The position numbers and the translations under genes were made by a program. Positions 33,980 through 49,150 of a stretch of 64,000 nt of DNA are shown in pieces (position 1 is the first letter of the stretch; each line of letters begins with the position of its first letter). The notes below the pieces were generated by a model that did no database searches, had not been told where the DNA came from, and was given only the letters and a program-made list of their open reading frames with translations. The stretch covers positions 186,001 through 250,000 of the IMG/VR virus record IMGVR_UViG_3300027793_000052; one strand, written 5' to 3'.

Positions 33980-36745
33980 ATGGCTTCACAAAAAGTATTA
34001 GTATCACCAGGTGTCTTTACATCAGAAAAAGATTTAACCTTTGTGGCACAACAAGTAGGTGTGACTACATTAGGTTTAGTTGGTGAGACAACAAAAGGTC
34101 CGGCTTTTGAACCTATATTCATTGCTAACTACGATGAATTTTTAACAATTTTTGGTGGTTTAAATCCTGAAAAATTTGGGGGTTCAAACCCAATACCAAA
34201 ATATGAATTACCTTACATAGCTAAGAGTTATTTAACCGAATCTAATCAATTGTTTGTGACAAGAGTATTAGGTTTAAACGGTTATGATGCTGGTGATGCT
34301 TGGGTTATTACGGCAGATGCTAACTATGATCCTTCAACAATTACCACTGTTTCAACAAGTGCTTTTACCGCAACATTTACAGGTGGTACATATACATCAA
34401 TTAGTGATATTAATGTTAATTATCTTAACTCACTAGGTTTATTACCAAATCCAACTACTAATGTAACAACAGAAAGTGTACCAGGTGTAACAACAGCATA
34501 TCCTGAAGGAGTTGTATTTACTAAAGTTGGTTCATCTTTTACAGGGGTATCAGCAACAATTATACAAACTTCTTATGATAGTAACGCTTTTACAGGTACA
34601 ACTTCAGGTACAGTAACAACTTATACAGCTACACAATATACCGAATATGAAGGTTTAGTATTAGCAGTATTAAGATCTAGAGGTAACTATTCTACAGATG
34701 CATTTACTTGGTCTACCGTTCAAGATCCTAACGGTGTTAAAATTGGTCTAACAGATTTAACAGACCCATTAGCACAATTCACCTTATCAGCATCTTCTGT
34801 TGGTTTCAGTGCGACATCTGTTTATAACGTATCATTAGATAAAACTAATAAAAATTATATTACTGGTGTATTAGGTGTTGATTGTTACGATAAGAATAGT
34901 AGAATTTTTGTTGAAGAAATTTATACTAACATGTTACAAGATTTAATTGATAACAATTACATCTTAGGTATTAATGACACTTTAACCCATGTTAATAATA
35001 TAGATAACTACAAACAACAATACCAAACTCCTGAAACTCCATGGGTTGTATCAGAATTACGTGGTAATGAAGTTTTCAAATTATTTAAATTTATTTCAAT
35101 ATCTGACGGTAGTTCAGCAAATAAAGAAATTAAAATCTCTATACAAAACATTAAACCTGACACTAAAGAGTTTGATATTATTGTTAGACAATGGGATGAT
35201 ACTGATGCTAGACCTTCTATTTTAGAAAGTTTCCCTAAATGTAATATGGATCCTTCTTCAAACAATTTCGTAGCAAGAAGAATTGGTACTGCTGACGGTG
35301 AAAATGTTCTTAACAGTAGATTTATCATGTTGGTTATGAATCCTGACGCTCCAATAGACGCTTTCACAGCAGGTTTTGAAGGATATCGTGTGAGAGATTA
35401 TGGTACAGCAACAGCACCATTTATTGATTACAAAACCTTTTACGATCCTGAAAACGAAAGAATAAGAAAAGTATACTTAGGTATTACGGATACAAAAGGA
35501 ATTGACCAAGATTTATTTGATTGGAAAGGTTTAACTTCAAACGATACTTACTGGACAGCAACAACTAAAGGTTTCCACATGGATTCTGGAGCTACTGTGG
35601 CAGGTAACTTTGATTGTGGTCTTTATGAATTCCGTGATGATGCTGGTATCGAAGGTACTGATTATGAAACTTTAGCGTCTAGAAAATTCACATTTGTACC
35701 TTATTGGGGTTATGATGGTTGGGATTGTTATCGTAAATCTAGAACTAATACTGATAAATATCGTGTAGGTAAAGCAGGTTTTACGGCAGGTTTAGCCGCA
35801 GGACAATTTGAACAATTAGGCCCACAAGATGGTACTTCTGACTTGTACGCTTACTGGAATGGTTATAAAACATTCGCAAATCCTGAAGCTGTTAATATTA
35901 ACGTATTTGCAACACCTGGTATTGATTACGCTAACAACGGTTACTTAGTGGCTGAAGTTATTGACATGGTTGAAGAACAAAGAGCTGATTCAGTTTATAT
36001 TTTAAGTTCACCGGATAATTCTTATACCGAAACAGATAACGTAACTGAAAGTTTAGGATTTAATTCAATAACAGTAGATACGGCTGACGCACTTATTAGT
36101 TTACTTGAAGGGGCTGACATTGATTCTAACTATACAGCCACTTATTGGCCATGGATACAAGAAAGAGATTCCGAAAACACTGTTAACATTTGGTTACCTC
36201 CAACATTAGAAGTTGTTAGAAATATCGCCTTAACCGATAACGTGGCCTTCCCATGGTACGCAGTTGCTGGTTATACTCGTGGTTTAACAAACGCTATCCA
36301 AGCTCGTGTTAAATTAACAGAAGACGATAGAGATACTTTATATGAAGGTCGTGTTAATCCAATGGCAACTTTCTCCGATGTGGGTGTTGTTATTTGGGGT
36401 AATAAAAATTTACAAGTTAAGGATTCCGTTCTTGATAGATTAAACATCAGAAGATTGTTATTACAAGCTCGTAAGTTGATTACAGCGGTTGGTGTTAGAT
36501 TGTTATTCGAACAAAATGACCAAATTGTTAGAAATCAATTCTTGAACTTGGTTAACCCAATCTTAGATAACATCAGAAAAGAAAGAGGTTTAGCTGACTT
36601 TAGAGTTCAATTATCTAATGACCCTGAAGAAATAGATAGAAACGAAATGAGAGGTAAGATTTTCTTAAAACCAATACCTACATTAGAATACATCTACATT
36701 GAGTTTAACGTAACTCCTACTGGAGCTTCATTCGACAATATCTAA
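33980..36745 (+). CDS. Contractile tail sheath protein (T4 gp18-like)
   Basis: VSPGVFTSEKDLT, GETTKGPAFEP, PWYAVAG..RG, LYEGRVNP, WGNK, LNIRRLL, P.PTLEYI.I.F motifs. Confidence 0.95.
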   Translation: MASQKVLVSPGVFTSEKDLTFVAQQVGVTTLGLVGETTKGPAFEPIFIANYDEFLTIFGGLNPEKFGGSNPIPKYELPYIAKSYLTESNQLFVTRVLGLNGYDAGDAWVITADANYDPSTITTVSTSAFTATFTGGTYTSISDINVNYLNSLGLLPNPTTNVTTESVPGVTTAYPEGVVFTKVGSSFTGVSATIIQTSYDSNAFTGTTSGTVTTYTATQYTEYEGLVLAVLRSRGNYSTDAFTWSTVQDPNGVKIGLTDLTDPLAQFTLSASSVGFSATSVYNVSLDKTNKNYITGVLGVDCYDKNSRIFVEEIYTNMLQDLIDNNYILGINDTLTHVNNIDNYKQQYQTPETPWVVSELRGNEVFKLFKFISISDGSSANKEIKISIQNIKPDTKEFDIIVRQWDDTDARPSILESFPKCNMDPSSNNFVARRIGTADGENVLNSRFIMLVMNPDAPIDAFTAGFEGYRVRDYGTATAPFIDYKTFYDPENERIRKVYLGITDTKGIDQDLFDWKGLTSNDTYWTATTKGFHMDSGATVAGNFDCGLYEFRDDAGIEGTDYETLASRKFTFVPYWGYDGWDCYRKSRTNTDKYRVGKAGFTAGLAAGQFEQLGPQDGTSDLYAYWNGYKTFANPEAVNINVFATPGIDYANNGYLVAEVIDMVEEQRADSVYILSSPDNSYTETDNVTESLGFNSITVDTADALISLLEGADIDSNYTATYWPWIQERDSENTVNIWLPPTLEVVRNIALTDNVAFPWYAVAGYTRGLTNAIQARVKLTEDDRDTLYEGRVNPMATFSDVGVVIWGNKNLQVKDSVLDRLNIRRLLLQARKLITAVGVRLLFEQNDQIVRNQFLNLVNPILDNIRKERGLADFRVQLSNDPEEIDRNEMRGKIFLKPIPTLEYIYIEFNVTPTGASFDNI

Positions 36746-36765
36746 TAACAGATAAAATAACTAAT

Positions 36766-36794
36766 AAAAAGTCCACAATTTAGTGGACTTTTTT
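36766..36794 (+). terminator. Intrinsic terminator after sheath gene
   Basis: AAAAAGTCCAC-AATTTA-GTGGACTTTTTT. Confidence 0.85.
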
Positions 36795-36860
36795 GTTTTT
36801 ATTGTATATTTATATAATAATATGTTTAAGTCACGTTATAGTTTATAAAAATATTTTACC

Positions 36861-38615
36861 ATGAAAATAGAATTAATTTGTCAGTGTTGTAATAAACCCT
36901 TTGAAACAGAATTTAAGTTTAGGGATAAAAAGTTTTGTTCAAGAAACTGTTATTTTCAAAATGCTCGTCAAGGCAAAACAAAAATAGGTAGATCCAAAGA
37001 TGAAACAATAAGAGAAACTAGAGAATGTAAGGTTTGTGGTAAAGAATTCGAAGTGAAGAAAAAACAAAACAAACAAATGTGTTCTGACGAATGTAGGGTA
37101 AAATGGGGTAATAGAGATGATGTAAAACAAAAAAGATTAGATACCACTAAAAAAACGGTACAAGAAAAGTATGGTGTTGATCATATTTGGCAAGTTAAAG
37201 AGATACACCAAAAAACCATGGAAAATAGAGATATGGGGGTAGTTTCCACTAAGGTAAGTGAATCTTTAAAATCCAAAACTGATGAAGAAAAGAAAGATAT
37301 TTTAGAAAAAAGAAAAATAACAAAAGAAAAAATATATGGAAACCCATTTTATAACAACCCAAATAAGATATCTAATTCTTTAAAAGTTAGTTATCTTGTT
37401 AATGGTGATACTATAAATGAAAAAAGGGAAAAAACGATGTTAACCAAATACGGTGTTACATCTTCATTACAGTTAGATATCACTAGAGTTAAATTGGAGG
37501 AGATTAGGGATGAGGTTACAAAGAAGGGTGTTGAAGTCAGGAAGGCAAAGTATATAGAGTATTTAAAATCTAGATTAGAAGATAATAACCTATGTATATT
37601 ATCTGAGTATGATAAAAATAAGGAAGGTACCAAAAGTATAGAATATGAGTTTAAATGTTTAAAGTGCGATAATATTTTTACATCAACTGTGTTAGGTAGT
37701 GGTAAAATACCTATATGTAGAAAATGTAACCCAACATTTACAGAAACACATATTAGTAATAAAATAAAAGAGGTTTTAGATTTATATTCTATTAATTATA
37801 TACAGAATGATAGGAGGTTGATAAACCCATATGAGTTAGATTTTTATTTACCTGAACATAATTTAGCATTCGAAATTAATGGTAATTATTATCATTCTGA
37901 AATTGGTGGTGGTAAAGATAAATTTTATCATATAGATAAAACAAAATTAGCTAACCATAAAAACGTTAAAGTAATTCAACTATATGAGGATGAAATTATC
38001 CAAAACTTTGAAATAGTTAAAAGTAAGATTTTACACTTTATCGGAAAACAGGAAAATAAGATATACGCAAGAAAGTGTGTGTTAAAATTAATAGACAATA
38101 AAACTTCAAGAAAGTTTTTAGATGAAAACCATTTACAAGGTAATAGTAAATCATCTGTTAAATTAGGATTGTACCATCAAGATAAGTTGGTTTCTGTTAT
38201 GACATTCTCTAAGGGTAGGGTTGTAACATCGAATAGTGGTTGGGAGTTAATTAGGTTTTGTAATAAAAAATATACTTCTGTTATTGGTTCATTCAATAAA
38301 CTATTAAATTATTTTACCAAAAACTATGAGTTTGATGAGTTGATAACTTATTGTGATATTAGATGGTCGGGTATTAAACCAGAAGATACTGTATACTACA
38401 AAAATAATCTAAAGTTTGTTGGATTTACACCACCTTCCTATTGGTATATGGACAGGAAAAATTATAATTATAGACTACATAGATTTAACTTTAGGAAATC
38501 CAAATTAGTATCTGAAGGTTTTGATGTTAATAAAACTGAATGGGATATAATGAAAGAACGTGGTTTTGATAGAATATGGGATTGTGGTACAATGAAATTT
38601 ATTTATAATAAATAA
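36861..38615 (+). mobile_element. Putative free-standing endonuclease (Zn-finger + PD-(D/E)xK-like + C-terminal GNAT/Mom-like domain), copy 1
   Basis: CxxC/FCSRNC motifs; KYGV repeats; ELDFYLPEHNLAFEINGNYYH nuclease motif; YARKC...HLQG...WELIRFC...RIWDCG C-terminal domain. Confidence 0.75.
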
Positions 38616-38618
38616 AAT

Positions 38619-39317
38619 ATGAAACAGTTAATAAAAAAAATATTAGACGAAAACTTAAAAAGAATTATTGTAACAGACGAAAATAGGTTTGATTATGATA
38701 TAACGGAGTCTTTTGATAAACCATCTAATAATGTAAAAAAGATGGATGATTTTTTTTATGAGGTTATAGAAGATGGTGTTAAATCACATTTTAATTTTAG
38801 AATAGAATTTAATAATAATTATTTTAATGATTTTAGGTGGATATCGAATGATGTTGATGTTTTTTATGATTTTTCTTGGGATTACGAATCAAATGTGTCT
38901 AGGGGTGATAAAATAAAATATTGGAAAACGATGACAACAACATCTTTTAAGATATTGGATGATTTTATAAGAACTATGAACCCTAAGGTTATAAAATTTG
39001 GTGATAGGTATACCGGCAATTTTAAAGTCTACTTTCATGAACAATTTTTAAAAATATTAAAATCAATATTTGGTCAAAATTACGATGTGATAGATTATTC
39101 CGATAAAAATGTAATATTTTTGGTTAAAAAAGAGTTTGTAATTTTAGAAGGTACTTCTGTAAGAAAACGTATGGAATATTTAGGTGAGACATTAGCTGAA
39201 GCTGAAAACTATTGGAAATATCCACATAAGAGAAAAAGACAAATGAAAGGTATTATAAAGAATGATTACCGTAAGGAACAAATAAAACGTATTATAAATA
39301 AACTAAGATATACCTAA
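38619..39317 (+). CDS. Hypothetical protein with N-terminal MKQLIKKILDE motif
   Basis: ORF; shared N-terminal peptide. Confidence 0.75.
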   Translation: MKQLIKKILDENLKRIIVTDENRFDYDITESFDKPSNNVKKMDDFFYEVIEDGVKSHFNFRIEFNNNYFNDFRWISNDVDVFYDFSWDYESNVSRGDKIKYWKTMTTTSFKILDDFIRTMNPKVIKFGDRYTGNFKVYFHEQFLKILKSIFGQNYDVIDYSDKNVIFLVKKEFVILEGTSVRKRMEYLGETLAEAENYWKYPHKRKRQMKGIIKNDYRKEQIKRIINKLRYT

Positions 39318-39319
39318 AT

Positions 39320-39347
39320 AAAAGCCCATAGAAATATGGGCTTTTTT
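39320..39347 (+). terminator. Intrinsic terminator
   Basis: AAAAGCCCATA-GAAA-TATGGGCTTTTTT. Confidence 0.85.
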
Positions 39348-39370
39348 AATGCCAAAACTATTTATATAAT

Positions 39371-39670
39371 ATGTTAGAACATTTTGATATATTACATCTA
39401 TTATTAGCTTACACAGGTTTGTTAATACATGTAATATTAAAATTGGCACAATTACCTGGAAGTTTATTTGAGAATATTACAAAGAAAGATATATTGGTTG
39501 TTTTGGCATCCATTCTAAGTATTCCTGTAATTCTAATAGTATGTAGTGACACAGCAATGAAAGAATTTTTACCTATTAATAATGTTACAGCATTTTTAGC
39601 CGGATATCAAACACAATCATTTTTAAAAACTTTTTCAAATTTTACTAAAAAAGTAAATAAACAAGAATGA
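39371..39670 (+). CDS. Small multi-TM membrane protein (holin-like, uncertain)
   Basis: 2-3 hydrophobic segments and a basic C-terminus; no endolysin in the window to support a holin role. Confidence 0.5.
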   Translation: MLEHFDILHLLLAYTGLLIHVILKLAQLPGSLFENITKKDILVVLASILSIPVILIVCSDTAMKEFLPINNVTAFLAGYQTQSFLKTFSNFTKKVNKQE

Positions 39671-39710
39671 TTTTTATTAAATAAAGCATATTTATATATA
39701 AAAAACGACT

Positions 39711-39938
39711 ATGTCAAAAATTATTAAAAAACAAGATATCACTGTACTTATTGAAAGTACTTTAAAATCTGCTGGTATTGAACCTAAATTTGAAGGTGAA
39801 AAAGAAGTTGTATCAGAATCTAAAGTTGAGGGAGTTGTTACCGAAACTAAAAAAGAAGAAAAACCTTTAATAAACGAAGACTTCCAAAACGAAATGGATA
39901 GATTCAAAAAATTAACAAATTATACTTTTAAAAAATAA
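39711..39938 (+). CDS. Small acidic hypothetical protein (putative head core/internal peptide)
   Basis: 75 aa with multiple (I/V)-x-E sites; C-terminal LINE...EMDRFKKL. Confidence 0.65.
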   Translation: MSKIIKKQDITVLIESTLKSAGIEPKFEGEKEVVSESKVEGVVTETKKEEKPLINEDFQNEMDRFKKLTNYTFKK

Positions 39939-39944
39939 TTAAAA

Positions 39945-40472
39945 ATGGCAACAAGATATAAATTAACAAAAGACCAATTAGAAAGAATCGTTGAAAATTT
40001 CGTAATGGAATCAGCTTCTATAGAAAGTAAGAAAGCCCCTGTGAAAAATCATATACCATCACAAGGTGCTGAAGCTAAGAAACACGTTAAAAATAAGATA
40101 ACTGGTGATATTGTAGAACCTAGTGAAGGTGTACCAGCAAAACCTCCTGTAATGAAAAAGAAATTATCACAGGCTGCTGACGCTAAAAAACATGTTTCAA
40201 ATTCTAAAATGAAACATTCTAACAAGGCTAAAGTTGTTAAAGAAGAAAAAGAACAATTGATTAAAGAATTTCTTGGTGAATTCTCCGATGTGGATGTAAT
40301 GTCGGTAAGTCAGATTATTACTGTGGTAATGGCTATGTTGGGTATAGTTGGTGTAGCAGCTTGGAGATCTTTAAAAGAACCTACCAAAAAGAAATTGATG
40401 TCTTCTAAACATAAAGAAGTTGCTGACAAAATCATCAACAAGATTGATGACGAGGTGTCTAAGAAAAGTTAA
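39945..40472 (+). CDS. Hypothetical protein with internal repeat and C-terminal TM helix
   Basis: QGAEAKKHVKNK / QAADAKKHVSNS repeat; hydrophobic IITVVMAMLGIVGVAAW. Confidence 0.7.
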   Translation: MATRYKLTKDQLERIVENFVMESASIESKKAPVKNHIPSQGAEAKKHVKNKITGDIVEPSEGVPAKPPVMKKKLSQAADAKKHVSNSKMKHSNKAKVVKEEKEQLIKEFLGEFSDVDVMSVSQIITVVMAMLGIVGVAAWRSLKEPTKKKLMSSKHKEVADKIINKIDDEVSKKS

Positions 40473-40491
40473 TTTAATTATTAATTATAAT

Positions 40492-40524
40492 AAAAAAGGG
40501 TGATTATATAATCACCCTTTTTTT
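40492..40524. terminator. Bidirectional terminator between convergent genes
   Basis: AAAAAAGGGTGATT-ATAT-AATCACCCTTTTTTT. Confidence 0.88.
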
Positions 40525-40802
40525 ATGTCATCATCTGTTAAATCGTTAAAATCGAAAAACTCATCGGTCTTTCCGTTATTCAATTGGTCTACCCAGTAAC
40601 ATTTTTCTAAATAAGATTTTATAGAATCTATTAAAATATGACAAACTATGATTAGTCTGATTAAATCAAACCAAAAACCTAAAGAAACAAAAAAAACAGT
40701 TAAAAACATTAATAAAGATACTACAAGTTTAATATGGAAATCTTTATTCCAAAAGTTTATAGCGAATTCTATTTTTTCTGTTTTATTGAATATTGGTTTC
40801 AT
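40512..40802 (-). CDS. Small two-TM membrane protein
   Basis: Two hydrophobic segments; preceded by a consensus Bacteroidota-type promoter. Confidence 0.7.
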   Translation of the reverse strand: MKPIFNKTEKIEFAINFWNKDFHIKLVVSLLMFLTVFFVSLGFWFDLIRLIIVCHILIDSIKSYLEKCYWVDQLNNGKTDEFFDFNDLTDDDIKKG

Positions 40803-40824
40803 GTCTGTTTATTGTTTAATAATA

Positions 40825-40856
40825 CAAATATAAGTAAAGTTTTAAATATACACAAA
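40825..40856 (-). promoter_or_regulatory. Bacteroidota sigmaA-type promoter (TTTG-N20-TATATTTG)
   Basis: Exact -33/-7 consensus upstream of 40802. Confidence 0.75.
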
Positions 40857-40871
40857 TAAATTTTTATCAAT

Positions 40872-40896
40872 AAAAATGGGGGTATTTAACCCCCAT
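40872..40896 (-). terminator. Terminator after SPFH gene
   Basis: ATGGGGG/CCCCCAT stem followed by a T tract on the minus strand. Confidence 0.75.
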
Positions 40897-40900
40897 GTTA

Positions 40901-42142
40901 CTATTTACTAGTTTTCATATCTAAATTAATCTCTTTGGCTGTTTTTGCCATCATTAATTGGATTAGTGACGCCGCCTCTGTATTATGAGAACTACCATTC
41001 CCACCCATAACTGTAGTAGGAACCCAATTACTATTACTCATAGCTGCCGCGTATTCTTTATTAACTTTTACCCAAGCATCTAATTTTTGTTCTAATGCTC
41101 CATTAGCCTGAATAACTGCTCTTTTCTTATACGCCTCAGCGTCGGCTAGAATTTTAACCTTTGACGCTTCTTCGGTTGCCGCCATTTTAGCTATACGTTG
41201 TTGTTCCAAATCCTGTTTTGCTAACTCCACCTTAGTTTGAGCAGCTACTACCTGTTTGGTCTGTTCTTGTTTTTGAGTGTACTCAATCTCTACAAGTTTC
41301 TTCTTACCCTCAGCCTCAGCCGTTAAAGCCTGTTGTTGTGCTGTCATTAACCTCTGTTTAGATACGGAGGCCGCTGTTGACGCGTCAATTTTCTTAGCTA
41401 ACATATCATCAACTCGTTTCTCATAATCCACATCGGTAATAGAAGCGTCAGCCACTGTAATACCATATTCTTTAATACTAGACACTTTACGTTTAACTTG
41501 ACCATTCTTATCAGTTTGTACTACTGTTTGATATATACGTTTTTTGGCTTTTTCTAATGAATCATATTCAACATATTCCTTTGTTTGTAAAATAAAAGTG
41601 CCACTCTTTAATTGGTCAATATAATCTTGTGACATCTGTGCTCTACCACCAGAATAATGCATTTCAGAACTCATTAACTGAGCCGCTGATTGTAAACATT
41701 CTTTGGTGTATGGTGACAGTCTTTTAGTTACCAATGATTGTGGTGTCCTATGTGTATTATGTATTAATATCATATCCTTTTCATCATTTGGTAATATGTA
41801 TTGGGCTATACCAGATACATCGGCAGTAGTAGCATCCCCACCAAAACGAACACCTATTTTACCTATTTCAATACCATTATCTTCTAACTCTAGATTAGCC
41901 TCTTGTTTAGAATATGATACTGAAATCTGATTTGGCCAAGAAGTTTTCTTAGCGAATAACCCAGCGTAATAAACACCAGATTCAAATTGGACGAATTGTT
42001 TACCACTCATTTGTTGAACCACTGTTCTTTCACCAGCGTCATTCCAAGCAAAAGGGTTAACAAATAAAAACATAATAATAGCTAATACAGATACTACACC
42101 TGTTACAACCCATTTAATGGGGAATTTTTGATTTTCAAACAT
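40901..42142 (-). CDS. SPFH/band-7 (prohibitin/flotillin-like) membrane protein
   Basis: N-terminal TM; SPFH-like core (YGITVADASITDVDY); long AE/AQ-rich coiled coil; C-terminal WVP..VMGG. Confidence 0.85.
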   Translation of the reverse strand: MFENQKFPIKWVVTGVVSVLAIIMFLFVNPFAWNDAGERTVVQQMSGKQFVQFESGVYYAGLFAKKTSWPNQISVSYSKQEANLELEDNGIEIGKIGVRFGGDATTADVSGIAQYILPNDEKDMILIHNTHRTPQSLVTKRLSPYTKECLQSAAQLMSSEMHYSGGRAQMSQDYIDQLKSGTFILQTKEYVEYDSLEKAKKRIYQTVVQTDKNGQVKRKVSSIKEYGITVADASITDVDYEKRVDDMLAKKIDASTAASVSKQRLMTAQQQALTAEAEGKKKLVEIEYTQKQEQTKQVVAAQTKVELAKQDLEQQRIAKMAATEEASKVKILADAEAYKKRAVIQANGALEQKLDAWVKVNKEYAAAMSNSNWVPTTVMGGNGSSHNTEAASLIQLMMAKTAKEINLDMKTSK

Positions 42143-42143
42143 G

Positions 42144-42419
42144 TTATTTTAGATTTTTGGTTTTTTCTTTGATTTGTTTTACTTTTTCTAACTCTTCCTT
42201 CCAATGTTGGAGGTCTTTTTCGGCACCTTCAATACCTTCAGAGGCGTTTATTTCTGCCCTTGTTATTTTCAATTTAATCACTTCGATTAAATGTTCAACC
42301 TCTTCGGAGGTGGTTTGTTTTTTATCGTTTTGTTTAAACGACTCCAATATTTTGAATCCTGCATATACTGTAACTGTTATGAGACCCAAAATTACAAAAA
42401 ATATTAATAGCCTGAACAT
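42144..42419 (-). CDS. Single-TM coiled-coil protein (possible SPFH partner)
   Basis: N-terminal TM and charged helical tail; 1 nt from the SPFH start. Confidence 0.7.
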   Translation of the reverse strand: MFRLLIFFVILGLITVTVYAGFKILESFKQNDKKQTTSEEVEHLIEVIKLKITRAEINASEGIEGAEKDLQHWKEELEKVKQIKEKTKNLK

Positions 42420-42439
42420 ATTTTTTTATTTTTTTTTAA

Positions 42440-43120
42440 TTATTTAAAAGGAACTACTTCATCTATAATACCGTAAGCTAAAGCCTCTTTAGATGATAAC
42501 CATAAGTCACGACTAGCATCCTCCATAACTTGTTTAGGGTCCTTACCACAATATTCACCCAATAATTCAAAAAGGGTTTCATTGATTTTTTCCCATTCTT
42601 TCATTGTAATACGTGCGTCTTGGATGTTACCCATAGCACCACCACTAGATTGGTGTAACATTGTTCTAGAAAACCTTAAAGAACTTCTCATCCCTTTGGT
42701 GCCAGCACCTAACAATACTGAACCCATAGATGCTGCCATACCTGTGTTAATGGTAGCTATTGGTGCCTTTGTTACGGACATTGTATCCACTATAGATAAA
42801 CCTGACTTAACAGAACCACCTGGACTATCAATATGCATAGTAATTCTTTTCTTAGAATCTTGTTGATCCAAGAAAAGTAGTTGTGCTTGTACAATAGTCG
42901 ACATTCTGTCATTAACAGGTCCTGCCACCCAAAGGATACGGTCCATCATCAATCTGTCGAATACCGAAATTACTGTAGCGTTCATTTGTCTTTCTTCCAC
43001 AACTGCGGGTGTCATACTACCCTGAACCATTGGTATTTGTGACATAAAGGATTGGTATGCATGTAATGTGTTGGAACCAATATATTGGTCTTTGATTGCA
43101 AATTTTTCAAATTCTGTCAT
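42440..43120 (-). CDS. clpP: ATP-dependent Clp protease proteolytic subunit
   Basis: IDSPGGSV, GMAASMGS (catalytic Ser), MLHQ (His), RDLWLS (Asp), EALAYGIIDEV. Confidence 0.95.
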   Translation of the reverse strand: MTEFEKFAIKDQYIGSNTLHAYQSFMSQIPMVQGSMTPAVVEERQMNATVISVFDRLMMDRILWVAGPVNDRMSTIVQAQLLFLDQQDSKKRITMHIDSPGGSVKSGLSIVDTMSVTKAPIATINTGMAASMGSVLLGAGTKGMRSSLRFSRTMLHQSSGGAMGNIQDARITMKEWEKINETLFELLGEYCGKDPKQVMEDASRDLWLSSKEALAYGIIDEVVPFK

Positions 43121-43142
43121 ATTTTATTAATTTTTGTTTAGG

Positions 43143-43174
43143 TAAAGATATTTATAATAAAATTAATTGTCAAA
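43143..43174 (-). promoter_or_regulatory. Near-consensus Bacteroidota promoter for clpP operon (TTTG-N20-TATCTTTA)
   Basis: One mismatch in the -7 box; overlaps the plus-strand ATATTTAT at 43148-43155. Confidence 0.5.
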
Positions 43175-43185
43175 AAAATATACAC

Positions 43186-45705
43186 ATGATTACAAAAGCT
43201 GAGTTTGAAAAAGCAATGGAAATGGACCGTCAACAAACAATAAAGGAGTTGATGGAGAACTGTGACCTATTATTAAAAGGTAACCGTATGTTAACTGAAA
43301 ATAGATTATCAGAATCGGAATATATGGTTCTAGAAGAAGGTCTTTGGGAAAAGGTTAAATATGGTTTGGCTAAATTAGGTCGTTACAAAGCAGGTGGTAA
43401 AATATTCGGTAAAGGTAAGATAGACCAAGAGGCTGGGGCTAAAATACAAGCTATATTAGATAAAAAAGGTAATGAGGTTATTAAAGCTTTAGATACTAAA
43501 ATTAAAGAAGAAAACCCTGAATTTCCTAACAACGAAAAAGGTGAACAATTCTTAAAAACCGTTATGGAAATAGCGGCAGTATATGATTCTATAGTAGCTT
43601 CCACTAAGAAAAAACCTAACGAAAAAGGATTTTTACCGGCAGATGCGGCCAATTCAGTTATAGCTGATTTAGCCGAATATGTACAAAAATTCTTAGATGT
43701 CGACTTAGCTGCCGCATATACAGTTATGGATTCTGAAGAAGAAAAAGTAGATAAAGAAAATGGTAATGAGGAACTTTTAACTGATGAAGTAGAGGATATA
43801 AATGAGGACGAGGCTGAAGATGTTAGAACACAATTACAATCTAAAGCCGGTAAAAAAACCTACGATACTAAAAGAATGGGTGGTGAAGGTTTGGCATCAA
43901 ATAAATTACCTTTAGTATTGGCTGGATTAGGTGGGGCTTTAGGAGCATTAGGTTGGTTAGCACAAACTGATTTCATTAAAGAAATTATCATTAAAATTTT
44001 TGGTGGTGATATCAATGTAACCGATACTGAAAAAATAACAGAAATAATTAATGGTGGTAATCCAGATTCTGAAGGTTTTGTTCATTGGGCAAGTAAACTA
44101 ATGGGTAAGGACCTTAAAACTGGTGCTGATATTTCAGAATTTGTTAACAAGTTTGGTGCTGAAGATGTTAGTCATATGTTTGATGGTAATGGTGCCGGTG
44201 ATTCAATGACACAAGTTAAACAACTCCAACAATTAGTTGGTGGTGAAAACGCTGGTAAAAGTGTAGGTGAGTTGTTTCAATCAGAAACTTTTGGTGATAT
44301 GAAACAAGGTAGAAACTTGTTTGGTGTGTCTAAGTCGGCTAGTTTTGTTTCTAAAACAATAACAACTGTTGTTAAGAAAACAGTTGTTAAAGGTGCTGGT
44401 ACAGTTATTGCGGCTAAAGTGGCGGCAATAGGTTCTGTTTTAGCCCCAATAGGTATCGCTTTAATAGGTACAGGTGCTTTAGTTAAACTTATGAGGATGA
44501 AAGGTTTAAAACAATCTAGAGCTAAAACACTTAACGATTTACTTCAATCATTACAACCTGTAGAAGCGGGTGAAGCTACAACAGTTCCAATATTACCGGA
44601 TCCTAAACCAAATCCAACGAAAGAAGGTGGTAACGGTAAGAACGATAAAGAAGGTTTATACAACGATTTATTAGGGTTTTTCAAATATACATATAACAAT
44701 AGAAAAATAGGTGGTGTGGAATCATCTGATGATGTCGAAAACACCAGTGATATTCAAGTTGGTAAAGAATATTTCTATACTAATAAGAAAGGTGAAAAAA
44801 ATGTTGTTAAAGTTGTTTCACTATCTAACCAATATAAAGCTGGTGATGATAAAAAATTCGGTACTAATGATGATGAAAAATTAGATAGTATAGAACCTGG
44901 TACAGCTTTCGTTGTGTTTAAAAAACCTAATAACACGTATGGTAACGAACCTGCCAGGGCTGTAAATAAAAAACAATTATCAACAGAAAACATAATGAGT
45001 AACAAAGATGTCATTAACGAAGGTAAATTCATAAAAGACCCACAAGTTATAAAAATATTAGAAAAGAATAAAGGTATAGATAAAAATAAGTTGGCCTTTT
45101 TCGATAACTTCCTAAGAAGAGTAGAGGTTATTAGAAACAAGGTTAATAAGATGGGTAATACTGGTGATAATGTTCTAGACAAGTTTATACAAAAATTAAA
45201 ATCTAACCCACTAATGACAAAAGATTTTGTTAAAACATTTAGTGTTGATCCTAACAACCAACAGAACGTTGAGGCAATGGGTGATTTCATTAATGATATT
45301 ATTGAAATTGTTTATAAAGGTAGATTTAGAGGTGCTAAAATAGAGGATGTAGCTAAAGGTGTCACAACCTTCAATAAAGAAGGTGGTGCCGTTGAGAAAA
45401 TGGGTAAACTAGGTGGTGGTAATATTAATAAGGTTGGTGTGGAGGAATCTTATTTAGTCGAAAGAAAGGGTAAGAAAGCTAAAGCTAAAAGTACCTTTAA
45501 AAACCATATAATAAGTTTCATCACAGACTTAATGGGAATGTTCCAATATATGACAAAACTTAAAAAACAAGGTAAATTATCATCTGACGGTGGTAAAAAA
45601 GAAAGTAAACCTAAACAAGAACCTAAACCACAACAAGAATCTAAAATTTTTACTAATAAAGTCTTACTAGAAGAAATAAGTAGAATTAAAAAATTAATGA
45701 AATAA
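43186..45705 (+). CDS. Large hypothetical protein with hydrophobic hairpins (putative internal/ejected protein)
   Basis: Start moved to ATG 43186, downstream of the ATATTTAT motif; Gly/Ala-rich hydrophobic helices; C-terminal LLEEISRIKKLMK. Confidence 0.75.
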   Translation: MITKAEFEKAMEMDRQQTIKELMENCDLLLKGNRMLTENRLSESEYMVLEEGLWEKVKYGLAKLGRYKAGGKIFGKGKIDQEAGAKIQAILDKKGNEVIKALDTKIKEENPEFPNNEKGEQFLKTVMEIAAVYDSIVASTKKKPNEKGFLPADAANSVIADLAEYVQKFLDVDLAAAYTVMDSEEEKVDKENGNEELLTDEVEDINEDEAEDVRTQLQSKAGKKTYDTKRMGGEGLASNKLPLVLAGLGGALGALGWLAQTDFIKEIIIKIFGGDINVTDTEKITEIINGGNPDSEGFVHWASKLMGKDLKTGADISEFVNKFGAEDVSHMFDGNGAGDSMTQVKQLQQLVGGENAGKSVGELFQSETFGDMKQGRNLFGVSKSASFVSKTITTVVKKTVVKGAGTVIAAKVAAIGSVLAPIGIALIGTGALVKLMRMKGLKQSRAKTLNDLLQSLQPVEAGEATTVPILPDPKPNPTKEGGNGKNDKEGLYNDLLGFFKYTYNNRKIGGVESSDDVENTSDIQVGKEYFYTNKKGEKNVVKVVSLSNQYKAGDDKKFGTNDDEKLDSIEPGTAFVVFKKPNNTYGNEPARAVNKKQLSTENIMSNKDVINEGKFIKDPQVIKILEKNKGIDKNKLAFFDNFLRRVEVIRNKVNKMGNTGDNVLDKFIQKLKSNPLMTKDFVKTFSVDPNNQQNVEAMGDFINDIIEIVYKGRFRGAKIEDVAKGVTTFNKEGGAVEKMGKLGGGNINKVGVEESYLVERKGKKAKAKSTFKNHIISFITDLMGMFQYMTKLKKQGKLSSDGGKKESKPKQEPKPQQESKIFTNKVLLEEISRIKKLMK

Positions 45706-45762
45706 AAAATAAAATTTCAGCATATTTATAATAAAAGATAACACATTAAAAAATAAAATACC

Positions 45763-46251
45763 ATGGCAGATTTATTAATGAGAATGCCGGTTCCATACGA
45801 ACCAAAAAAACAAAATAGATTTATATTAAGATTCCCATCACCACTAGGTATTCAGGAATGGTTTGTTAAAGCAGCTTCAAGACCTAAATACACGTCACAA
45901 GAAACTGAAATTCAGTTCTTAAACACATCTACTTTTGTAACAGGTAGATTTACTTGGGAAACTATAAGTGTAACATTCCGTGACCCTATTGGTCCATCGG
46001 CGGCACAAGCTTTAATGGAATGGGTTCGTCTTCATTCTGAATCCGTAACTGGTAGACAAGGATACGCTGCTGGATACAAGAAAGATGTTGAATTAGAATT
46101 ACTAGATCCAACAGGTGTTGTTATAGAAAAATGGATTTTACAAGGTACAATGTTAAATGATGTAGATTTCGGTTCTTTGGCCTATGATGCTAATGATATA
46201 GCTGAAATTACAGCAACTTTACGTTTCGATAGAGCTATACACGTATTCTAA
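45763..46251 (+). CDS. Tail tube protein (T4 gp19-like)
   Basis: EPKKQNRF, RP......EI.FLN, GR..WE.ISVTFRD, W.R...E...G..GY...YKKD.EL.LLDPTG...EKW.L.G, F.FD.A. Confidence 0.93.
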   Translation: MADLLMRMPVPYEPKKQNRFILRFPSPLGIQEWFVKAASRPKYTSQETEIQFLNTSTFVTGRFTWETISVTFRDPIGPSAAQALMEWVRLHSESVTGRQGYAAGYKKDVELELLDPTGVVIEKWILQGTMLNDVDFGSLAYDANDIAEITATLRFDRAIHVF

Positions 46252-46268
46252 AAATTATTTGTCATATA

Positions 46269-46300
46269 CTTGACAACCAAAATGAAAGTTCATATATTTG
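46269..46300 (+). promoter_or_regulatory. Bacteroidota-type promoter (CTTG-N20-TATATTTG)
   Basis: Exact -7 box 5 nt upstream of ATG 46306. Confidence 0.6.
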
Positions 46301-46305
46301 TATAT

Positions 46306-47889
46306 ATGGACTTTTCTTTTTTTATAACAGACAATAAATCTGGTCATAAGACCAAAGAGTCGTGGTTTTCTAAAAACCACCCAAAGGAATATCAAGCGGT
46401 GATTGATTATTGTGGTAGTAAATTACCAACAGATTCTTCTTTCAAAGAGAAGGTTTGGGTTTATTTCAACGCACTAGATGGTAGACCTTGTTGTGAATCC
46501 TGTGGTTCAACGGTTAAATTTTCGGAAAGGTTCGATAGAGGTTACAATCAGTTTTGTTCGTTGGATTGTGCTAACAAGAGTGGTTTATTAATAGATAAAA
46601 TTAAAAAGTCCAACCTAGAAAACCACGGTGTTGAATTTTACACCCAACACAAAGATTTTGTTGGTAAGCAGAAAAAAACTAAATCAGTTAGATACGGTAA
46701 TGAAAACTATAATAACGTAGGAAAAATGTTATCCACCAAGTTGGATAAATATGGTAATACAAATTATAACAATTTTGACTTATATAAGAAGACGTGTTTA
46801 AATAAATACGGTGAAGATAATTTCTGTAAAACAAAACAATATAGGGATTTATTAAAGAATAAAATTAAGGAAAGATACCCTAATTTAAATATTAAAAATA
46901 TTTCAGAAGATTTATCGGAATTGGAGATTTTGTGTGACGATTGTCACACCGAATATAAGATATCCCAAAGTTTACTTAGAGAACGTGTTAAACACAAATA
47001 TGTTAATTGTACTAACTGTAATCCTGTTGGTATGTCCTTTTCTTCCTCTTATGAAGATGAGTTATCTAAGATATTAAATGAGTGGGGTGTGGCACATTTA
47101 AGACACACCAAAATACCTGGTACTAAGTTAGAATTAGATATTTTAATACCACAAATTAACCTCGCCATCGAATTCAATGGGTTATTTTGGCATAACGAAC
47201 TTTTTGTTAACACTGAGTATCATTTAAATAAGACGGAATTGTGTGATAAAAACGGAATGGATTTAATACATATATTTGAGGACGAGTGGTTGTATAAAAA
47301 AGATGTGGTACTATCTATAATAAAAAACAAATTAGGGTTGATTACCCAAAGGGTATATGCCAGAAATTGTAGGATTAAATTAGTAACAAGTGGTCAACAT
47401 AAAGATTTTTTAGAGGATAATCACATACAAGGTTCTGTCAACACAACAATCAAATTGGGTTTATTCTATGGTGACGAATTAGTTTCATTAATGACCTTTG
47501 GTAGACGAAATGGTATTGGTAAAACTATAGATTGGGAACTTATTAGATTTTGTAATAAAAAAGATACGATCGTTGTTGGTTCAGCATCTAAGTTATTTAA
47601 ATATTTTATAAAAAACTATGAACCTAAAAATGTTATCTCTTACTCTGATAGAAGGTGGTTTTCGGGTGAATTATATCAATTGTTAGGGTTTAAACCAACA
47701 ACACCATCTCAACCAAATTATTGGTACGTTAATAATACGATTAGATACCATAGATTAAATTTCAAGAAAAACGTTTTGGTTAAACAAGGGTTTGATAAAA
47801 ACAAATCTGAACGTGAAATAATGTTTGAACGTGGATATTACCGTATATATGATTGTGGTAATATAAGATGGGAATATTTTTCTGAATAG
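46306..47889 (+). mobile_element. Putative free-standing endonuclease (Zn-finger + PD-(D/E)xK-like + GNAT/Mom-like), copy 2
   Basis: CESCG/FCSLDC; KYG repeats; ELDILIPQINLAIEFNGLFWH; YARNC...HIQG...WELIRFC...RIYDCG. Start set at MDFSFF (46306), after the promoter. Confidence 0.75.
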
Positions 47890-47924
47890 AAGAATATTTA
47901 TCAAATAGATATATTTCTAACGAA

Positions 47925-48353
47925 ATGAAAAAATTTATATTAACTTTTTTATTTTTCTTTATTTGTTTAACTTCTTTATGTCAAACAAATTATATTTTTA
48001 CGACCAAAGAATATAATACTTGGAAAGTTTCTGGTAACCCTATTTGTGGTGTGGGCAATGCTTATTGTACCGTGATTAGAAGTAACCAGCCCAATATTTA
48101 CGGTAATTATATATATGAAATATATTTTGCCACAAATTCTTATTTTGTTAATTGCCAAGTTTCTAGAACTTATATTCCAAACATATATGTCTACTATTAT
48201 GATGATAAATTAAACAAATATTTATTACCATTAAATTTTTACCCTTTTTGGATAACTGTCGGTAGTACAAGTTTAGTTTATACATTGTATCACCCCAACC
48301 CCTATTTAAAATTAACCATTTCGGTGGGTAAAATGGAACCAACAAATTATTAA
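47925..48353 (+). CDS. Secreted/periplasmic protein with Sec signal peptide
   Basis: MKKFILTFLFFFICLTSLC followed by Q. Confidence 0.7.
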   Translation: MKKFILTFLFFFICLTSLCQTNYIFTTKEYNTWKVSGNPICGVGNAYCTVIRSNQPNIYGNYIYEIYFATNSYFVNCQVSRTYIPNIYVYYYDDKLNKYLLPLNFYPFWITVGSTSLVYTLYHPNPYLKLTISVGKMEPTNY

Positions 48354-48355
48354 AA

Positions 48356-48736: not shown

Positions 48737-48744
48737 TATTTCAT

Positions 48745-49149: not shown

Positions 49150-49150
49150 T

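What the first reader, a model, noticed from the sequence alone, without database searches (positions are those of the whole stretch)
36861..47889. Two paralogous nuclease + GNAT/Mom-like fusions directly behind the sheath and tube genes
Seen: both have Zn-finger and KYG repeats, an ELD(F/I)...E(I/F)NG..(Y/W)H nuclease motif and a conserved ~190-aa C-terminal domain (YAR.C...H.QG...WELIRFC....V.GS..KL...Y.D.RW...RI(W/Y)DCG). Each follows a highly conserved tail gene. They have different promoter types (ATATTTAT versus host-type). Established: free-standing homing endonucleases insert beside the conserved genes they target; Mu Mom is a GNAT-fold DNA adenine modifier. Inference: selfish elements that may couple cutting with self-protective DNA modification, like a one-gene restriction-modification unit.
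Basis: partly seen in the sequence, partly recalled or inferred. Interest (0 to 1): 0.6.

Follow-up and report, generated by a model that had tools for sequence, protein, structure and literature searches.

The report
Hef-type homing endonucleases with Mom domain
The two genes are ordinary members of the known, very large "Hef-like" family of mobile phage homing endonucleases. Their C-terminal domain is a Mom-type DNA-modifying fold with its catalytic residues kept, a fusion already noted in print but never tested at the bench.

Summary
Window 36861-38615 (HefA, 584 aa) and 46306-47889 (HefB, 527 aa; the listed TTG at 46270 is a promoter -35 box) are paralogs with 33% identity (E 2e-66). They sit 116 nt behind the tail sheath gene and 55 nt behind the tail tube gene of a 318-kb uncultured freshwater jumbo phage.

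Both have the same layout:
- Zn finger(s), helical "KYG" repeats (DUF7487) and a Zn ribbon.
- A Vsr-like EDxHD nuclease. Its best and only PDB sequence hit, and its best fold hit, is I-Bth0305I (3R3P).
- A GNAT domain. The top Foldseek hit is the Mu Mom crystal structure 8BV8, and hhalign to a Mom profile gives 89.5%.

The Mom residues H58, R111, D149, R151 and Y159 are kept in 138-139 of 139 family members.

Both genes are sporadic insertions with sharp borders. Only 6 of 128 related loci carry such a gene behind the sheath and 4 of 92 behind the tube, and 16 of 92 hold a shorter Mom-less nuclease gene at the tube site.

The family is known: PHROG 3339, "Hef-like homing endonuclease". Mom-nuclease fusions in jumbo phages were described in 2021 with a restriction-modification reading. 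This is therefore a new member of a known kind. Whether the Mom domain modifies DNA remains untested.

The parts
33980..36745 (+). Tail sheath gene (921 aa), the conserved gene upstream of HefA
   Evidence: PHROG 23 tail sheath E 2.7e-52; Pfam Phage_sheath_1/1C
36766..36793 (+). Terminator-like hairpin after the sheath gene; an equivalent hairpin is present in relatives with and without HefA
36806..36813 (+). ATATTTAT promoter-like motif 55 nt upstream of HefA. The same motif precedes the sheath (33925), the 39711 ORF (39688), the tube (45722), the 47925 ORF (47894) and the 49363 ORF (49350)
36861..38615 (+). HefA (P0001, 584 aa): Hef-like free-standing homing endonuclease with a Mom-like C-terminal domain
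   Evidence: PHROG 3339 'homing endonuclease' E 2e-97. It is absent from most relatives, with sharp borders
36879..37100 (+). HefA: two CxxC...CSxxC (FCS-like) zinc fingers (aa 7-31 and 56-80)
   Evidence: read from the sequence; PHROG 1271/2308 partial matches
37113..37475 (+). HefA: three KYG repeats (aa about 85-205)
   Evidence: read from the sequence; aligned to the HefB repeats
37656..37727 (+). HefA: CxxC...CxxC zinc ribbon (aa 266-289)
   Evidence: Pfam Zn_ribbon_8, weak; the cysteines are invariant in alignment A4
37734..38042 (+). HefA: Vsr-like EDxHD nuclease domain (ELDF...EINGNYYH...YEDE)
   Evidence: Pfam DUF559, weak; family profile A3 hits only 3R3P, E 1.5e-5
38034..38612 (+). 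HefA: Mom-family GNAT domain. Equivalents of Mom H58, R111, D149, R151 and Y159 are present; the S124 equivalent is Asn
38619..39670 (+). Second, separate insertion: two ORFs (232 aa and 99 aa) with no family match and GC about 25%. It is absent even from relatives that carry HefA. It is not part of the endonuclease gene
45763..46251 (+). Tail tube gene (162 aa), the conserved gene upstream of HefB
   Evidence: PHROG 4542 tail tube E 5e-25; Pfam gp19, weak
46270..46298 (+). Sigma-70-like promoter match TTGACA-17-TATATT (11/12), conserved in HefB orthologs. Its -10 box ends 7 nt before the ATG. TATATTTG also fits the Bacteroidota -7 consensus TAnnTTTG (from my own knowledge)
46306..47889 (+). 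HefB (527 aa from ATG 46306; P0002 as listed starts at 46270): Hef-like free-standing homing endonuclease with a Mom-like C-terminal domain
   Evidence: PHROG 3339 E 2.5e-116. More than 4486 homologs at E<=1e-10. Precise 1.66-kb indel against L007
46492..46569 (+). HefB: CxxC...CSxxC zinc finger (four invariant cysteines)
46594..46878 (+). HefB: four KYG helix-loop repeats (Pfam DUF7487)
   Evidence: Pfam DUF7487 E 3.3e-8, above its cut-off; AF2 predicts a row of helices, pLDDT 83-96
46933..47019 (+). HefB: CxxC...CxxC zinc ribbon
47023..47325 (+). HefB: Vsr-like EDxHD nuclease domain (ELDI...EFNGLFWH...FEDE)
   Evidence: Profile hit to 3R3P E 1.5e-5. AF2 model against 3R3P: TM 0.74, rmsd 2.6 A; then Vsr 1CW0/1VSR
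47317..47886 (+). HefB: Mom-family GNAT domain with all tested Mom catalytic residues
   Evidence: AF2 pLDDT 91.8. Foldseek top hit 8BV8 (Mom) E 3e-8. GNAT Z about 14. hhalign to the Mom profile 89.5%

Best explanation
HefA and HefB are two of four free-standing Hef-type homing endonuclease genes in a 318-kb freshwater jumbo phage.

**Modules.** Each protein has three parts:
- A variable N-terminal DNA-recognition region: FCS-like Zn finger(s), KYG helix-loop repeats and a Zn ribbon.
- A Vsr-fold EDxHD nuclease of the I-Bth0305I type.
- A C-terminal GNAT domain of the Mom family.

**Shown here.**
- The domain identities.
- Intact catalytic residues in both enzymatic domains.
- The genes are discrete insertions in the intergenic DNA just behind the sheath and tube genes.
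- The same sites in relatives are mostly empty, or hold a different endonuclease gene.

**Inferred from the Hef and EDxHD families.** During co-infection the nuclease cuts the allele of a related phage that lacks the gene, in or near the neighbouring conserved structural gene. Recombinational repair then copies the endonuclease gene across.

**Inferred from residue conservation only.** The Mom-like domain is probably an active nucleic-acid-modifying enzyme working on DNA next to the nuclease. Its donor (Gly-tRNA, as in Mu Mom, or something else) and its purpose are not established. Possible purposes are immunity of the phage's own site, general anti-restriction, or help in target binding.
For: **Family membership.**
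- PHROG 3339 'homing endonuclease' at E 2e-97 and 2.5e-116.
- tblastn finds 419 phage records with matches annotated Hef, Hef-like or EDxHD homing endonuclease, in T4-like, Campylobacter, PA5oct and Lak phages.
- More than 4486 homologs at E<=1e-10.

**Nuclease.**
- The profile hits only 3R3P, E 1.5e-5.
- The fold match to 3R3P has TM 0.74 and rmsd 2.6 A, followed by Vsr.
- E37, H57, D87 and E88 are invariant; D39 and E50 are kept in at least 90% of sequences.

**Mom domain.**
- 45 of 53 family members hit Pfam Mom, best E 3.6e-9.
- Foldseek ranks 8BV8 first, E 3e-8.
- hhalign to 43 stand-alone Moms gives probability 89.5%, E 2e-6.
- Equivalents of Mom H58, R111, D149, R151 and Y159 are kept in 138-139 of 139 distinct sequences. 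These residues are reported as needed for Mom activity (PMC13219725). R111 is reported as specific to Mom within the GNAT superfamily (PMC7261163).

**Mobility.**
- Relatives lacking HefA keep homology up to window 36758 and resume at 39671-39688, with about 40 bp between.
- L007 goes from window 46260 to 47925 with 68 bp between.
- Occupancy is 6 of 128 loci behind the sheath and 4 of 92 behind the tube. Another 16 of 92 carry a roughly 295-aa Mom-less EDxHD gene at the tube site, and 6 of 92 have a Hef on the other side of the tube.
- The third paralog lies behind the major capsid gene.

**Precedent.**
- Hef of phage U5 cleaves nrdB (PMC2988022).
- A Hef-like gene lies beside the tail tube gene in phage LIMEstone1 (PMC3296691).
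- Hef was placed in the EDxHD family (PMC3239194).
Against: - No cleavage, homing or modification was or could be measured here.
- No co-conversion gradient was seen in the sheath gene. The relatives are about 25% diverged, so the test has little power.
- No allele lacking the gene was found among reads or contigs of four runs that hold the phage.
- Both proteins score below Pfam's gathering cut-off for Mom: 14.8 and 17-21 bits against 27.1.
- By pure structure (VIA Z), generic N-acetyltransferases score about 14 and Mom is not among the top 50. Kinship to Mom therefore rests on sequence and 3Di evidence and on residue conservation.
- The S124 equivalent, essential in Mu Mom, is Asn in HefA, and is N, G or D in 33 of 139 family members.
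Confidence: 0.75

Rival explanations
1. One-gene restriction-modification unit. The Mom-like domain modifies an adenine in the recognition site of its own nuclease. The carrier genome becomes immune while unmodified alleles of co-infecting relatives are cut.
For: - Every one of the four Mom-like domains in the genome is fused to a nuclease, and there is no stand-alone Mom.
- 25 of 26 Mom-domain ORFs in the related loci also carry the nuclease. The exception is cut by a contig end.
- Each paralog keeps the catalytic residues despite only 33-46% identity. That argues for selection on each copy rather than one genome-wide modifier.
- The N-terminal recognition region varies while the nuclease-plus-Mom module is constant.
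- A similar reading has been published for jumbo phages (PMC7824862).
Against: - Mom-less EDxHD homing genes hold the same tube site in 16 of 92 relatives, and the genome has two more nuclease-only copies. Modification is therefore not needed for such elements to persist.
- There is no evidence that modification and cleavage share a site.
- HefA carries Asn at the S124 position.
Confidence: 0.3
2. The Mom-like domain is a recognition or base-flipping module rather than a transferase. It helps the nuclease bind or distort the target and transfers nothing.
For: - The Mom fold has a DNA-binding cleft and a helical insertion. In Mu Mom this insertion is required and is modelled in the major groove (PMC13219725).
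- The AF2 model shows a helical insertion between the last strands at the same topological place.
- The serine essential in Mu Mom is replaced in 24% of family members.
Against: Five residues needed for catalysis in Mu Mom are invariant in 139 sequences. That is more than a binding role would be expected to demand, although binding of a flipped adenine could use the same residues.
Confidence: 0.25
3. These are not homing elements but weapons. The Mom domain protects the whole phage genome against host restriction, and the nuclease degrades host or competitor DNA. This is the reading in the jumbo-phage survey.
For: - Proposed in PMC7824862. That survey counts five 'momylating enzymes' in PA5oct, and tblastn finds five Hef-like places in PA5oct.
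- HefB has a host-type promoter match, compatible with early expression.
Against: - Occupancy is sporadic and site-specific, with sharp insertion borders beside conserved genes.
- Alternative endonuclease genes occupy the same site. Both features are the signature of homing elements, not of a fixed defence gene.
- A genome-wide modifier would not need four diverged copies.
- The long modular DNA-binding region suggests rare, long targets.
Confidence: 0.15
4. The GNAT domain acts on something other than DNA, for example an aminoacyl-tRNA or a protein, as in TacT-like toxins or protein N-acetyltransferases.
For: By structure alone the best Z-scores are to protein N-alpha-acetyltransferases such as Naa50 and RimI (Z about 14).
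Against: - Sequence profiles and Foldseek place the domain nearest Mom.
- The arginine specific to Mom, together with the D..R pair, is invariant.
- The domain is always fused to a DNA nuclease and DNA-binding modules.
Confidence: 0.05

Closest known systems
Hef and Hef-like free-standing homing endonucleases (phage U5; Acj9, Yersinia, Campylobacter, LIMEstone1 and PA5oct phages; PHROG 3339)
   Same: - Full-length similarity of 31-37% identity over 79-99% of HefB, including the C-terminal domain.
- PHROG 3339 matched end to end.
- Free-standing position beside conserved genes. LIMEstone1 already has one next to its tail tube gene.
   Different: - The host phage is an uncultured freshwater jumbo phage with no close cultured relative (best tube match 41% identity).
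- The N-terminal recognition regions differ.
- No experimental data exist for these copies.
I-Bth0305I, prototype of the EDxHD (Vsr-fold) homing endonucleases (PDB 3R3P)
   Same: - Nuclease domain with the same fold (TM 0.74, rmsd 2.6 A).
- Conserved E/D/H/D-type catalytic residues.
- DNA-binding region N-terminal to the nuclease.
   Different: - I-Bth0305I is intron-encoded.
- It uses NUMOD/HTH modules.
- It ends with the nuclease (266 aa) and has no Mom-like domain.
Bacteriophage Mu Mom (PDB 8BV8; Pfam PF25680)
   Same: - GNAT fold with a helical insertion near the C-terminus.
- Equivalents of H58, E108, R111, D149, R151 and Y159 are conserved.
   Different: - Mom is a stand-alone 241-aa dimeric enzyme under Com control.
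- Here the domain is the C-terminal third of a nuclease.
- The Y59 and W48 equivalents differ (I/L and F).
- The S124 equivalent is variable.
- Scores are below Pfam's cut-off for these two proteins.
- Donor and product are unknown.
Mom-REase fusions of jumbo phages (Iyer et al. 2021, PMC7824862)
   Same: Apparently the same architecture and the same proteins. That paper counts five 'momylating enzymes' in PA5oct, and tblastn finds five Hef-like places in the PA5oct record.
   Different: That paper reads them as restriction-modification-like conflict systems. It does not mention Hef or EDxHD (0 occurrences). The data here add evidence for site-specific mobility.
Single-chain restriction-modification enzymes (Type IIG/IIC, e.g. 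MmeI or BcgI; from my own knowledge)
   Same: A nuclease and a DNA-modifying domain lie in one polypeptide with a shared recognition part. This is a 'works like' comparison only.
   Different: - Those enzymes use SAM-dependent methyltransferase domains and PD-(D/E)xK or similar nucleases.
- They are not homologous to a GNAT/Mom domain.
- They are not known as homing elements.

Membership tests
EDxHD / Vsr-like homing endonucleases (I-Bth0305I, Hef) | Vsr-like nuclease fold | tested here: met
   AF2 model of HefB aa 13-352 (pLDDT 89). Top Foldseek hits are 3R3P (TM 0.74, rmsd 2.6 A), then 1CW0 and 1VSR
EDxHD / Vsr-like homing endonucleases (I-Bth0305I, Hef) | Conserved catalytic acidic and histidine residues (composite EDxHD motif) | tested here: met
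   E37, H57, D87 and E88 are invariant, and D39 and E50 are kept in at least 90% of 53 sequences. They align with the D196 and H213 positions of 3R3P. Both window proteins carry them
EDxHD / Vsr-like homing endonucleases (I-Bth0305I, Hef) | Sporadic, site-specific presence beside or within conserved genes (mobility signature) | tested here: met
   Sharp indel borders. Occupancy is 6 of 128 loci (sheath site) and 4 of 92 (tube site). Other endonuclease genes occupy the same site
EDxHD / Vsr-like homing endonucleases (I-Bth0305I, Hef) | Site-specific cleavage of the allele lacking the gene, and gene conversion | not testable with these tools
   Needs cleavage assays and phage crosses. The co-conversion scan was uninformative
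Hef-like family (PHROG 3339) | Full-length profile match | tested here: met
   E 2.2e-97 (aa 33-583) and 2.5e-116 (aa 39-536) over profile positions about 41-534 of 536
Mom family (Pfam PF25680) / GNAT superfamily | GNAT fold | tested here: met
   AF2 pLDDT 91.8. VIA Z 13-14 and rmsd 2.3-2.9 A over about 130 residues to many GNATs. The Foldseek top hit is 8BV8
Mom family (Pfam PF25680) / GNAT superfamily | Score above the curated Pfam cut-off (27.1 bits) | tested here: not met
   HefA scores 14.8 bits; HefB scores 17.0 bits (21.0 for the domain alone). However, 45 of 53 homologs match at E<=0.01 (best 3.6e-9), and hhalign profile against profile gives 89.5%
Mom family (Pfam PF25680) / GNAT superfamily | Residues required for Mom activity (H58, R111, S124, D149, R151, Y159) | tested here: met
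   Five of the six are kept in 138-139 of 139 sequences and in all four paralogs. The S124 equivalent is Ser in HefB and in 106 of 139 sequences, but Asn in HefA. The residue list comes from PMC13219725
Mom family (Pfam PF25680) / GNAT superfamily | Helical (HTH-like) insertion near the C-terminus, required in Mu Mom | tested here: inconclusive
   The model has helices at residues 146-171 between the last strands. The Foldseek alignment to 8BV8 spans 190-192 columns. The sequence there does not align with Mom by hhalign
Mom family (Pfam PF25680) / GNAT superfamily | Gly-tRNA-dependent N6-adenine modification of dsDNA | not testable with these tools
   Needs expression and nucleoside LC-MS. The genome encodes 22 tRNAs including tRNA-Gly(UCC), which is compatible but not specific
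Single-chain restriction-modification enzymes | Modification by the same polypeptide blocks its own cleavage at a shared site | not testable with these tools
   Only the co-occurrence of the two domains in one chain is shown

The most novel reading that the evidence does not exclude
Hef-type homing endonucleases, a family with thousands of members across T4-like, Campylobacter and jumbo phages, are active Mom-type DNA adenine modifiers, possibly dependent on aminoacyl-tRNA. They would mark their own genome at the nuclease's target. That would make them the first homing elements whose immunity comes from an enzymatic DNA modification rather than from target-site sequence change: a mobile, single-chain, R-M-like selfish gene.
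Probability: 0.25. Interest if true: 0.7.

Novelty: new member of a known kind. Interest (0 to 1): 0.33.

Why it matters
As an annotation this is routine: two more Hef-like homing endonuclease genes in a phage.

The useful point is that two literatures describe the same proteins without referring to each other:
- Phage geneticists call them Hef-like homing endonucleases.
- A comparative-genomics survey calls them Mom-REase 'momylation' systems.

The 2026 biochemical and structural work on Mom built its search profile only from sequences containing nothing but a Mom domain. Its text mentions neither fusions nor homing endonucleases.

The data here show that Mom's catalytic constellation is invariant across 139 Hef-like proteins. 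They also show that these genes have the population signature of mobile elements. Together this makes a concrete question directly testable: does a homing endonuclease carry its own DNA-modifying immunity function?

The natural contrast at the tube site offers a ready comparison for that test: a Hef with a Mom domain, a short Mom-less endonuclease, or an empty site.

Tried and rejected
- **Megablast, phages.** The 12-kb region found nothing in the phage collection, so there is no close sequenced relative.
- **Single-sequence search, PDB.** phmmer of the HefB C-domain against PDB sequences found nothing. A family profile found only a marginal GNAT (E 0.39). Kinship to Mom needed profile-profile and fold searches.
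- **hhalign, single Mom sequence.** This gave a correct-looking alignment with no statistical weight (probability 1.3%). It was replaced by a 43-sequence Mom profile.
- **VIA-align.** It did not single out Mom among GNATs.
- **Co-conversion scan.** Identity to the window along the sheath gene, comparing relatives with and without HefA, showed no gradient. This is uninformative at about 25% divergence.
- **Reads.**
  - Four runs were laid on window 43500-49400. No joint skipping HefB was found.
  - The raw-read run gave one read.
  - RNA-library contigs identical to the window span the 869-aa ORF, the tube and HefB (43500-47880). In a second RNA run, depth falls from 29 to about 5 at 46275.
  - The tool warns that DNA can be present in such libraries and that contigs do not measure expression, so I do not claim transcription.
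- **NCBIfam and PADLOC.** Neither gave a family.
- **Papers not held.** The original Hef paper (PMC1275590) and Iyer et al. 2009 (PMC2995806) are not held. What is said about them comes from papers that cite them.
- **Rejected readings.**
  - The interval 36861-47889 is not one system. The Clp protease, SPFH and other genes between the two endonucleases are unrelated cargo with their own presence/absence pattern.
  - The TTG at 46270 and the ATG at 46282 are not the start of HefB.
- **Not run.** No complex prediction was run, because no protein-protein binding is claimed.

Full report
**Setting.** The window is bases 186001-250000 of a single 317,983-bp IMG/VR virus record estimated 96% complete. 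GC is about 31%. The record carries 22 tRNA genes. Near-identical DNA occurs in many freshwater metagenomes from 2017 to 2025. The best tail-tube match among sequenced phages is only 41% identical (Microcystis, Flavobacterium and Rhodothermus phages). It is therefore an uncultured freshwater jumbo myovirus.

**Observation.**
- ORF 36861-38615 (HefA, 584 aa) and ORF 46270-47889 (HefB) are paralogs: 33% identity over 454 aa, E 2e-66.
- HefA lies 116 nt behind the tail sheath gene (33980-36745). HefB lies behind the tail tube gene (45763-46251).
- The HefB start needs correcting.
  - The family consensus begins MDFSFF..., which is ATG 46306. This gives the family-typical 527 aa.
  - The TTG at 46270 belongs to TTGACA-17-TATATT. 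This is the only 11/12 sigma-70-type match on the + strand in 36.6-48.1 kb, and it is conserved in the orthologs of L004 and L006.
- Upstream of HefA there is a terminator hairpin and then ATATTTAT.
  - This octamer occurs 33 times in the window against 16.6 +/- 4.2 expected.
  - Genome-wide, 79 of 155 sense copies lie 8-80 nt upstream of a long-ORF ATG, against 25 of 155 in the opposite orientation.
  - It precedes the sheath, tube and neighbouring genes.
  - The 'two promoter types' remark is therefore a fair description of the sequence, although function is not shown.

**Domains.** Both proteins match PHROG 3339 ('homing endonuclease') end to end, at E 2e-97 and 2.5e-116. By tblastn HefB matches 419 phage records. 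Many are annotated Hef, Hef-like or EDxHD homing endonuclease, in Yersinia, Acinetobacter Acj9, Campylobacter, PA5oct, Lak and other phages. The word search found more than 4486 homologs at E<=1e-10.

- *N-terminal region.* It holds CxxC...CSxxC zinc finger(s) and three (HefA) or four (HefB) KYG repeats. The repeats are Pfam DUF7487 (E 3.3e-8) and are predicted as a row of helix-loop units. A four-cysteine zinc ribbon follows.
- *Nuclease.*
  - A 53-sequence profile hits only 3R3P among all PDB sequences, at E 1.5e-5. 3R3P is the catalytic domain of I-Bth0305I.
  - The AF2 model (pLDDT 89) matches 3R3P best (TM 0.74, rmsd 2.6 A), followed by E. coli Vsr.
  - The catalytic-type residues are invariant or nearly so.
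  - The I-Bth0305I paper had already placed 'bacteriophage Hef type homing endonucleases' in this EDxHD family (PMC3239194).
- *C-terminal domain.*
  - The last 190 aa fold with pLDDT 91.8.
  - Foldseek ranks the Mu Mom crystal structure 8BV8 first (E 3e-8), ahead of ordinary GNATs.
  - VIA-align confirms the GNAT fold (Z about 14) but does not single out Mom.
  - 45 of 53 family members hit Pfam Mom (best E 3.6e-9). The two window proteins stay below the curated cut-off.
  - A profile-profile comparison with 43 stand-alone Moms gives 89.5% probability and E 2e-6 over 132 columns.
- *Residue mapping to Mom.*
  - In that alignment, Mom H58, E108, R111, D149, R151 and Y159 fall on HefB-domain H36, E74, R77, D111, R113 and Y120.
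  - Across 139 distinct Hef-like domains the five catalytic positions are kept in 138-139 sequences and E74 in 137.
  - The 2026 structural study reports R111, S124 and R151 as essential, and H58, Y59, D149 and Y159 as important (PMC13219725).
  - The 2020 study notes that the arginine is specific to Mom within the GNAT superfamily (PMC7261163).
  - The S124 equivalent is Ser in HefB and in 106 of 139 sequences. It is Asn in HefA.
- Mom is now reported to use Gly-tRNA(Gly) rather than acyl-CoA.

**Mobility.** I fetched 160 related loci using the tube and sheath proteins as queries.

- *Sheath-tube spacing.* In distant relatives the sheath and tube genes are adjacent, about 110 bp apart (for example L051, L053, L057). 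Here they are 9 kb apart.
- *Sheath site.*
  - Relatives without HefA keep DNA homology up to window 36758 and resume at 39671-39688, with only about 40 bp between.
  - Relatives with HefA go from its stop straight to 39688.
  - The two small ORFs at 38619-39670 are therefore a second, separate insertion.
- *Tube site.* L007 runs from window 46260 to 47925 with 68 bp between. This is a precise 1.66-kb indel equal to HefB.
- *Occupancy*.
  - A Hef-plus-Mom gene follows the sheath in 6 of 128 loci.
  - A Hef-plus-Mom gene follows the tube in 4 of 92 loci.
  - In 16 of 92 loci the tube site holds a gene of about 295 aa with a C2H2 finger, KYG repeats and an EDxHD nuclease but no Mom domain (L011:6559-7443; Pfam DUF559 E 1.8e-8).
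  - In 6 of 92 loci another Hef sits on the opposite strand just upstream of the tube.
- *Own genome.*
  - It has four Mom-like domains, all fused to the nuclease, and two further nuclease-only copies.
  - The third paralog lies 41 nt behind the gp23-like major capsid gene.
- *Interpretation.* Sporadic, site-specific occupancy beside the most conserved structural genes, with different endonuclease genes competing for one site, is the classic signature of free-standing homing endonuclease genes.
- *Precedent.* Hef of phage U5 cleaves nrdB (PMC2988022). LIMEstone1 has a Hef-like gene next to its tail tube gene (PMC3296691).

**What is not shown.**
- No cleavage, homing or modification can be measured here.
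- The co-conversion scan was flat.
- No allele lacking HefB appeared in four sequencing runs.
- RNA-library contigs identical to the window cover the tube and HefB. By the tool's own caveats this does not prove transcription.

**Mechanism.** I am confident that these are mobile Hef/EDxHD homing endonuclease genes.

- *For an active Mom-like domain.* Five catalytic residues are invariant across 139 sequences and in all four diverged paralogs. That points to an active enzyme, selected in each copy and working together with its own nuclease.
- *Against modification being necessary.* Mom-less relatives live at the same site, so modification is not needed for this way of life.

**Novelty.** The family is known.
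- The jumbo-phage survey of Iyer et al. [quoted passage not shown] It proposes protection plus attack and counts five such enzymes in PA5oct.
- tblastn finds five Hef-like places in PA5oct.
- That paper does not mention Hef or EDxHD. The Mom biochemistry paper built its search profile only from sequences containing nothing but a Mom domain, and its text mentions neither fusions nor homing endonucleases.
- The finding is thus a new member of a known kind. The open, testable question is whether a homing endonuclease carries an enzymatic immunity function.

Noticed in passing
window 38619-39670: Two ORFs (232 aa; and 99 aa, hydrophobic) form a separate insertion right after HefA. GC is about 25%, the lowest in the window. 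They have no Pfam or PHROG match, and they are absent even from relatives that carry HefA.
   Followed up: partly
L011:6559-7443 (also L008, L013, L014, L020, L023, L024, L051, L088 and others): A gene of about 295 aa occupies the same site behind the tube gene in 16 of 92 related loci. It has a C2H2 finger, KYG repeats and an EDxHD/DUF559 nuclease, but no Mom domain. It offers a natural Mom-less comparison.
   Followed up: partly
L003:3112-4794 (genome 144112-145794) and L002:3184-4890 minus strand (genome 107184-108890): These are the third and fourth Hef-plus-Mom paralogs. The third lies 41 nt behind the gp23-like major capsid gene and has a different N-terminus (an HTH-like region and a C2H2-like finger). 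The fourth lies next to an AAA/KaiC-like ATPase gene.
   Followed up: partly
window 36746-45762: The sheath and tube genes are 9 kb apart here. The gap holds HefA, small ORFs, an SPFH/Band-7 protein (40901-42142, minus strand), a ClpP-like protease (42440-43120, minus strand) and an 869-aa ORF with no family match. In distant relatives the two tail genes are about 110 bp apart. The SPFH and 869-aa genes are themselves present or absent among close relatives.
   Followed up: partly
window 46293-46308: The -10 box of the HefB promoter-like site ends 7 nt before the ATG, and no Shine-Dalgarno sequence is visible. The mRNA may be leaderless or nearly so. TATATTTG also fits the Bacteroidota -7 element, which hints at the host.
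   Followed up: no
whole genome; window 33925, 36806, 39688, 45722, 47894, 49350: ATATTTAT(A) is an orientation-specific motif upstream of genes. 79 of 155 sense copies lie 8-80 nt before a long-ORF ATG, against 25 of 155 for the reverse orientation. It is probably a phage promoter element for the structural genes.
   Followed up: partly
window 34342-34481 against L104-L110: The sheath genes of some close relatives carry about 300 extra bases at this point. This is an insertion domain within the sheath protein.
   Followed up: no
window 48369-49363: One DNA contig of run X14 joins 48369 to 49363 and skips 993 bases, which hold the ORFs 48356-48736 and 48745-49149. The anchor is short (22 letters), so support is weak. 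It may be another indel among strains.
   Followed up: no
window 45763/46317 (run X14): One contig joins the start of the tube gene to an inverted copy of a Hef N-terminus. This matches relatives such as L004-L006, which carry a Hef on the minus strand just upstream of the tube. It shows that such an arrangement exists in the same lake samples.
   Followed up: partly
L011:8675-9184 minus strand: A further small nuclease-like ORF (...FDFYLLEYNTCIEFDGIQHF...) lies 2 kb downstream of the tube gene in a relative. It suggests that the region is crowded with endonuclease genes.
   Followed up: no
genome 2410-21688 (outside the window): There are clusters totalling 22 tRNA genes, including tRNA-Gly(UCC).
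   Followed up: no
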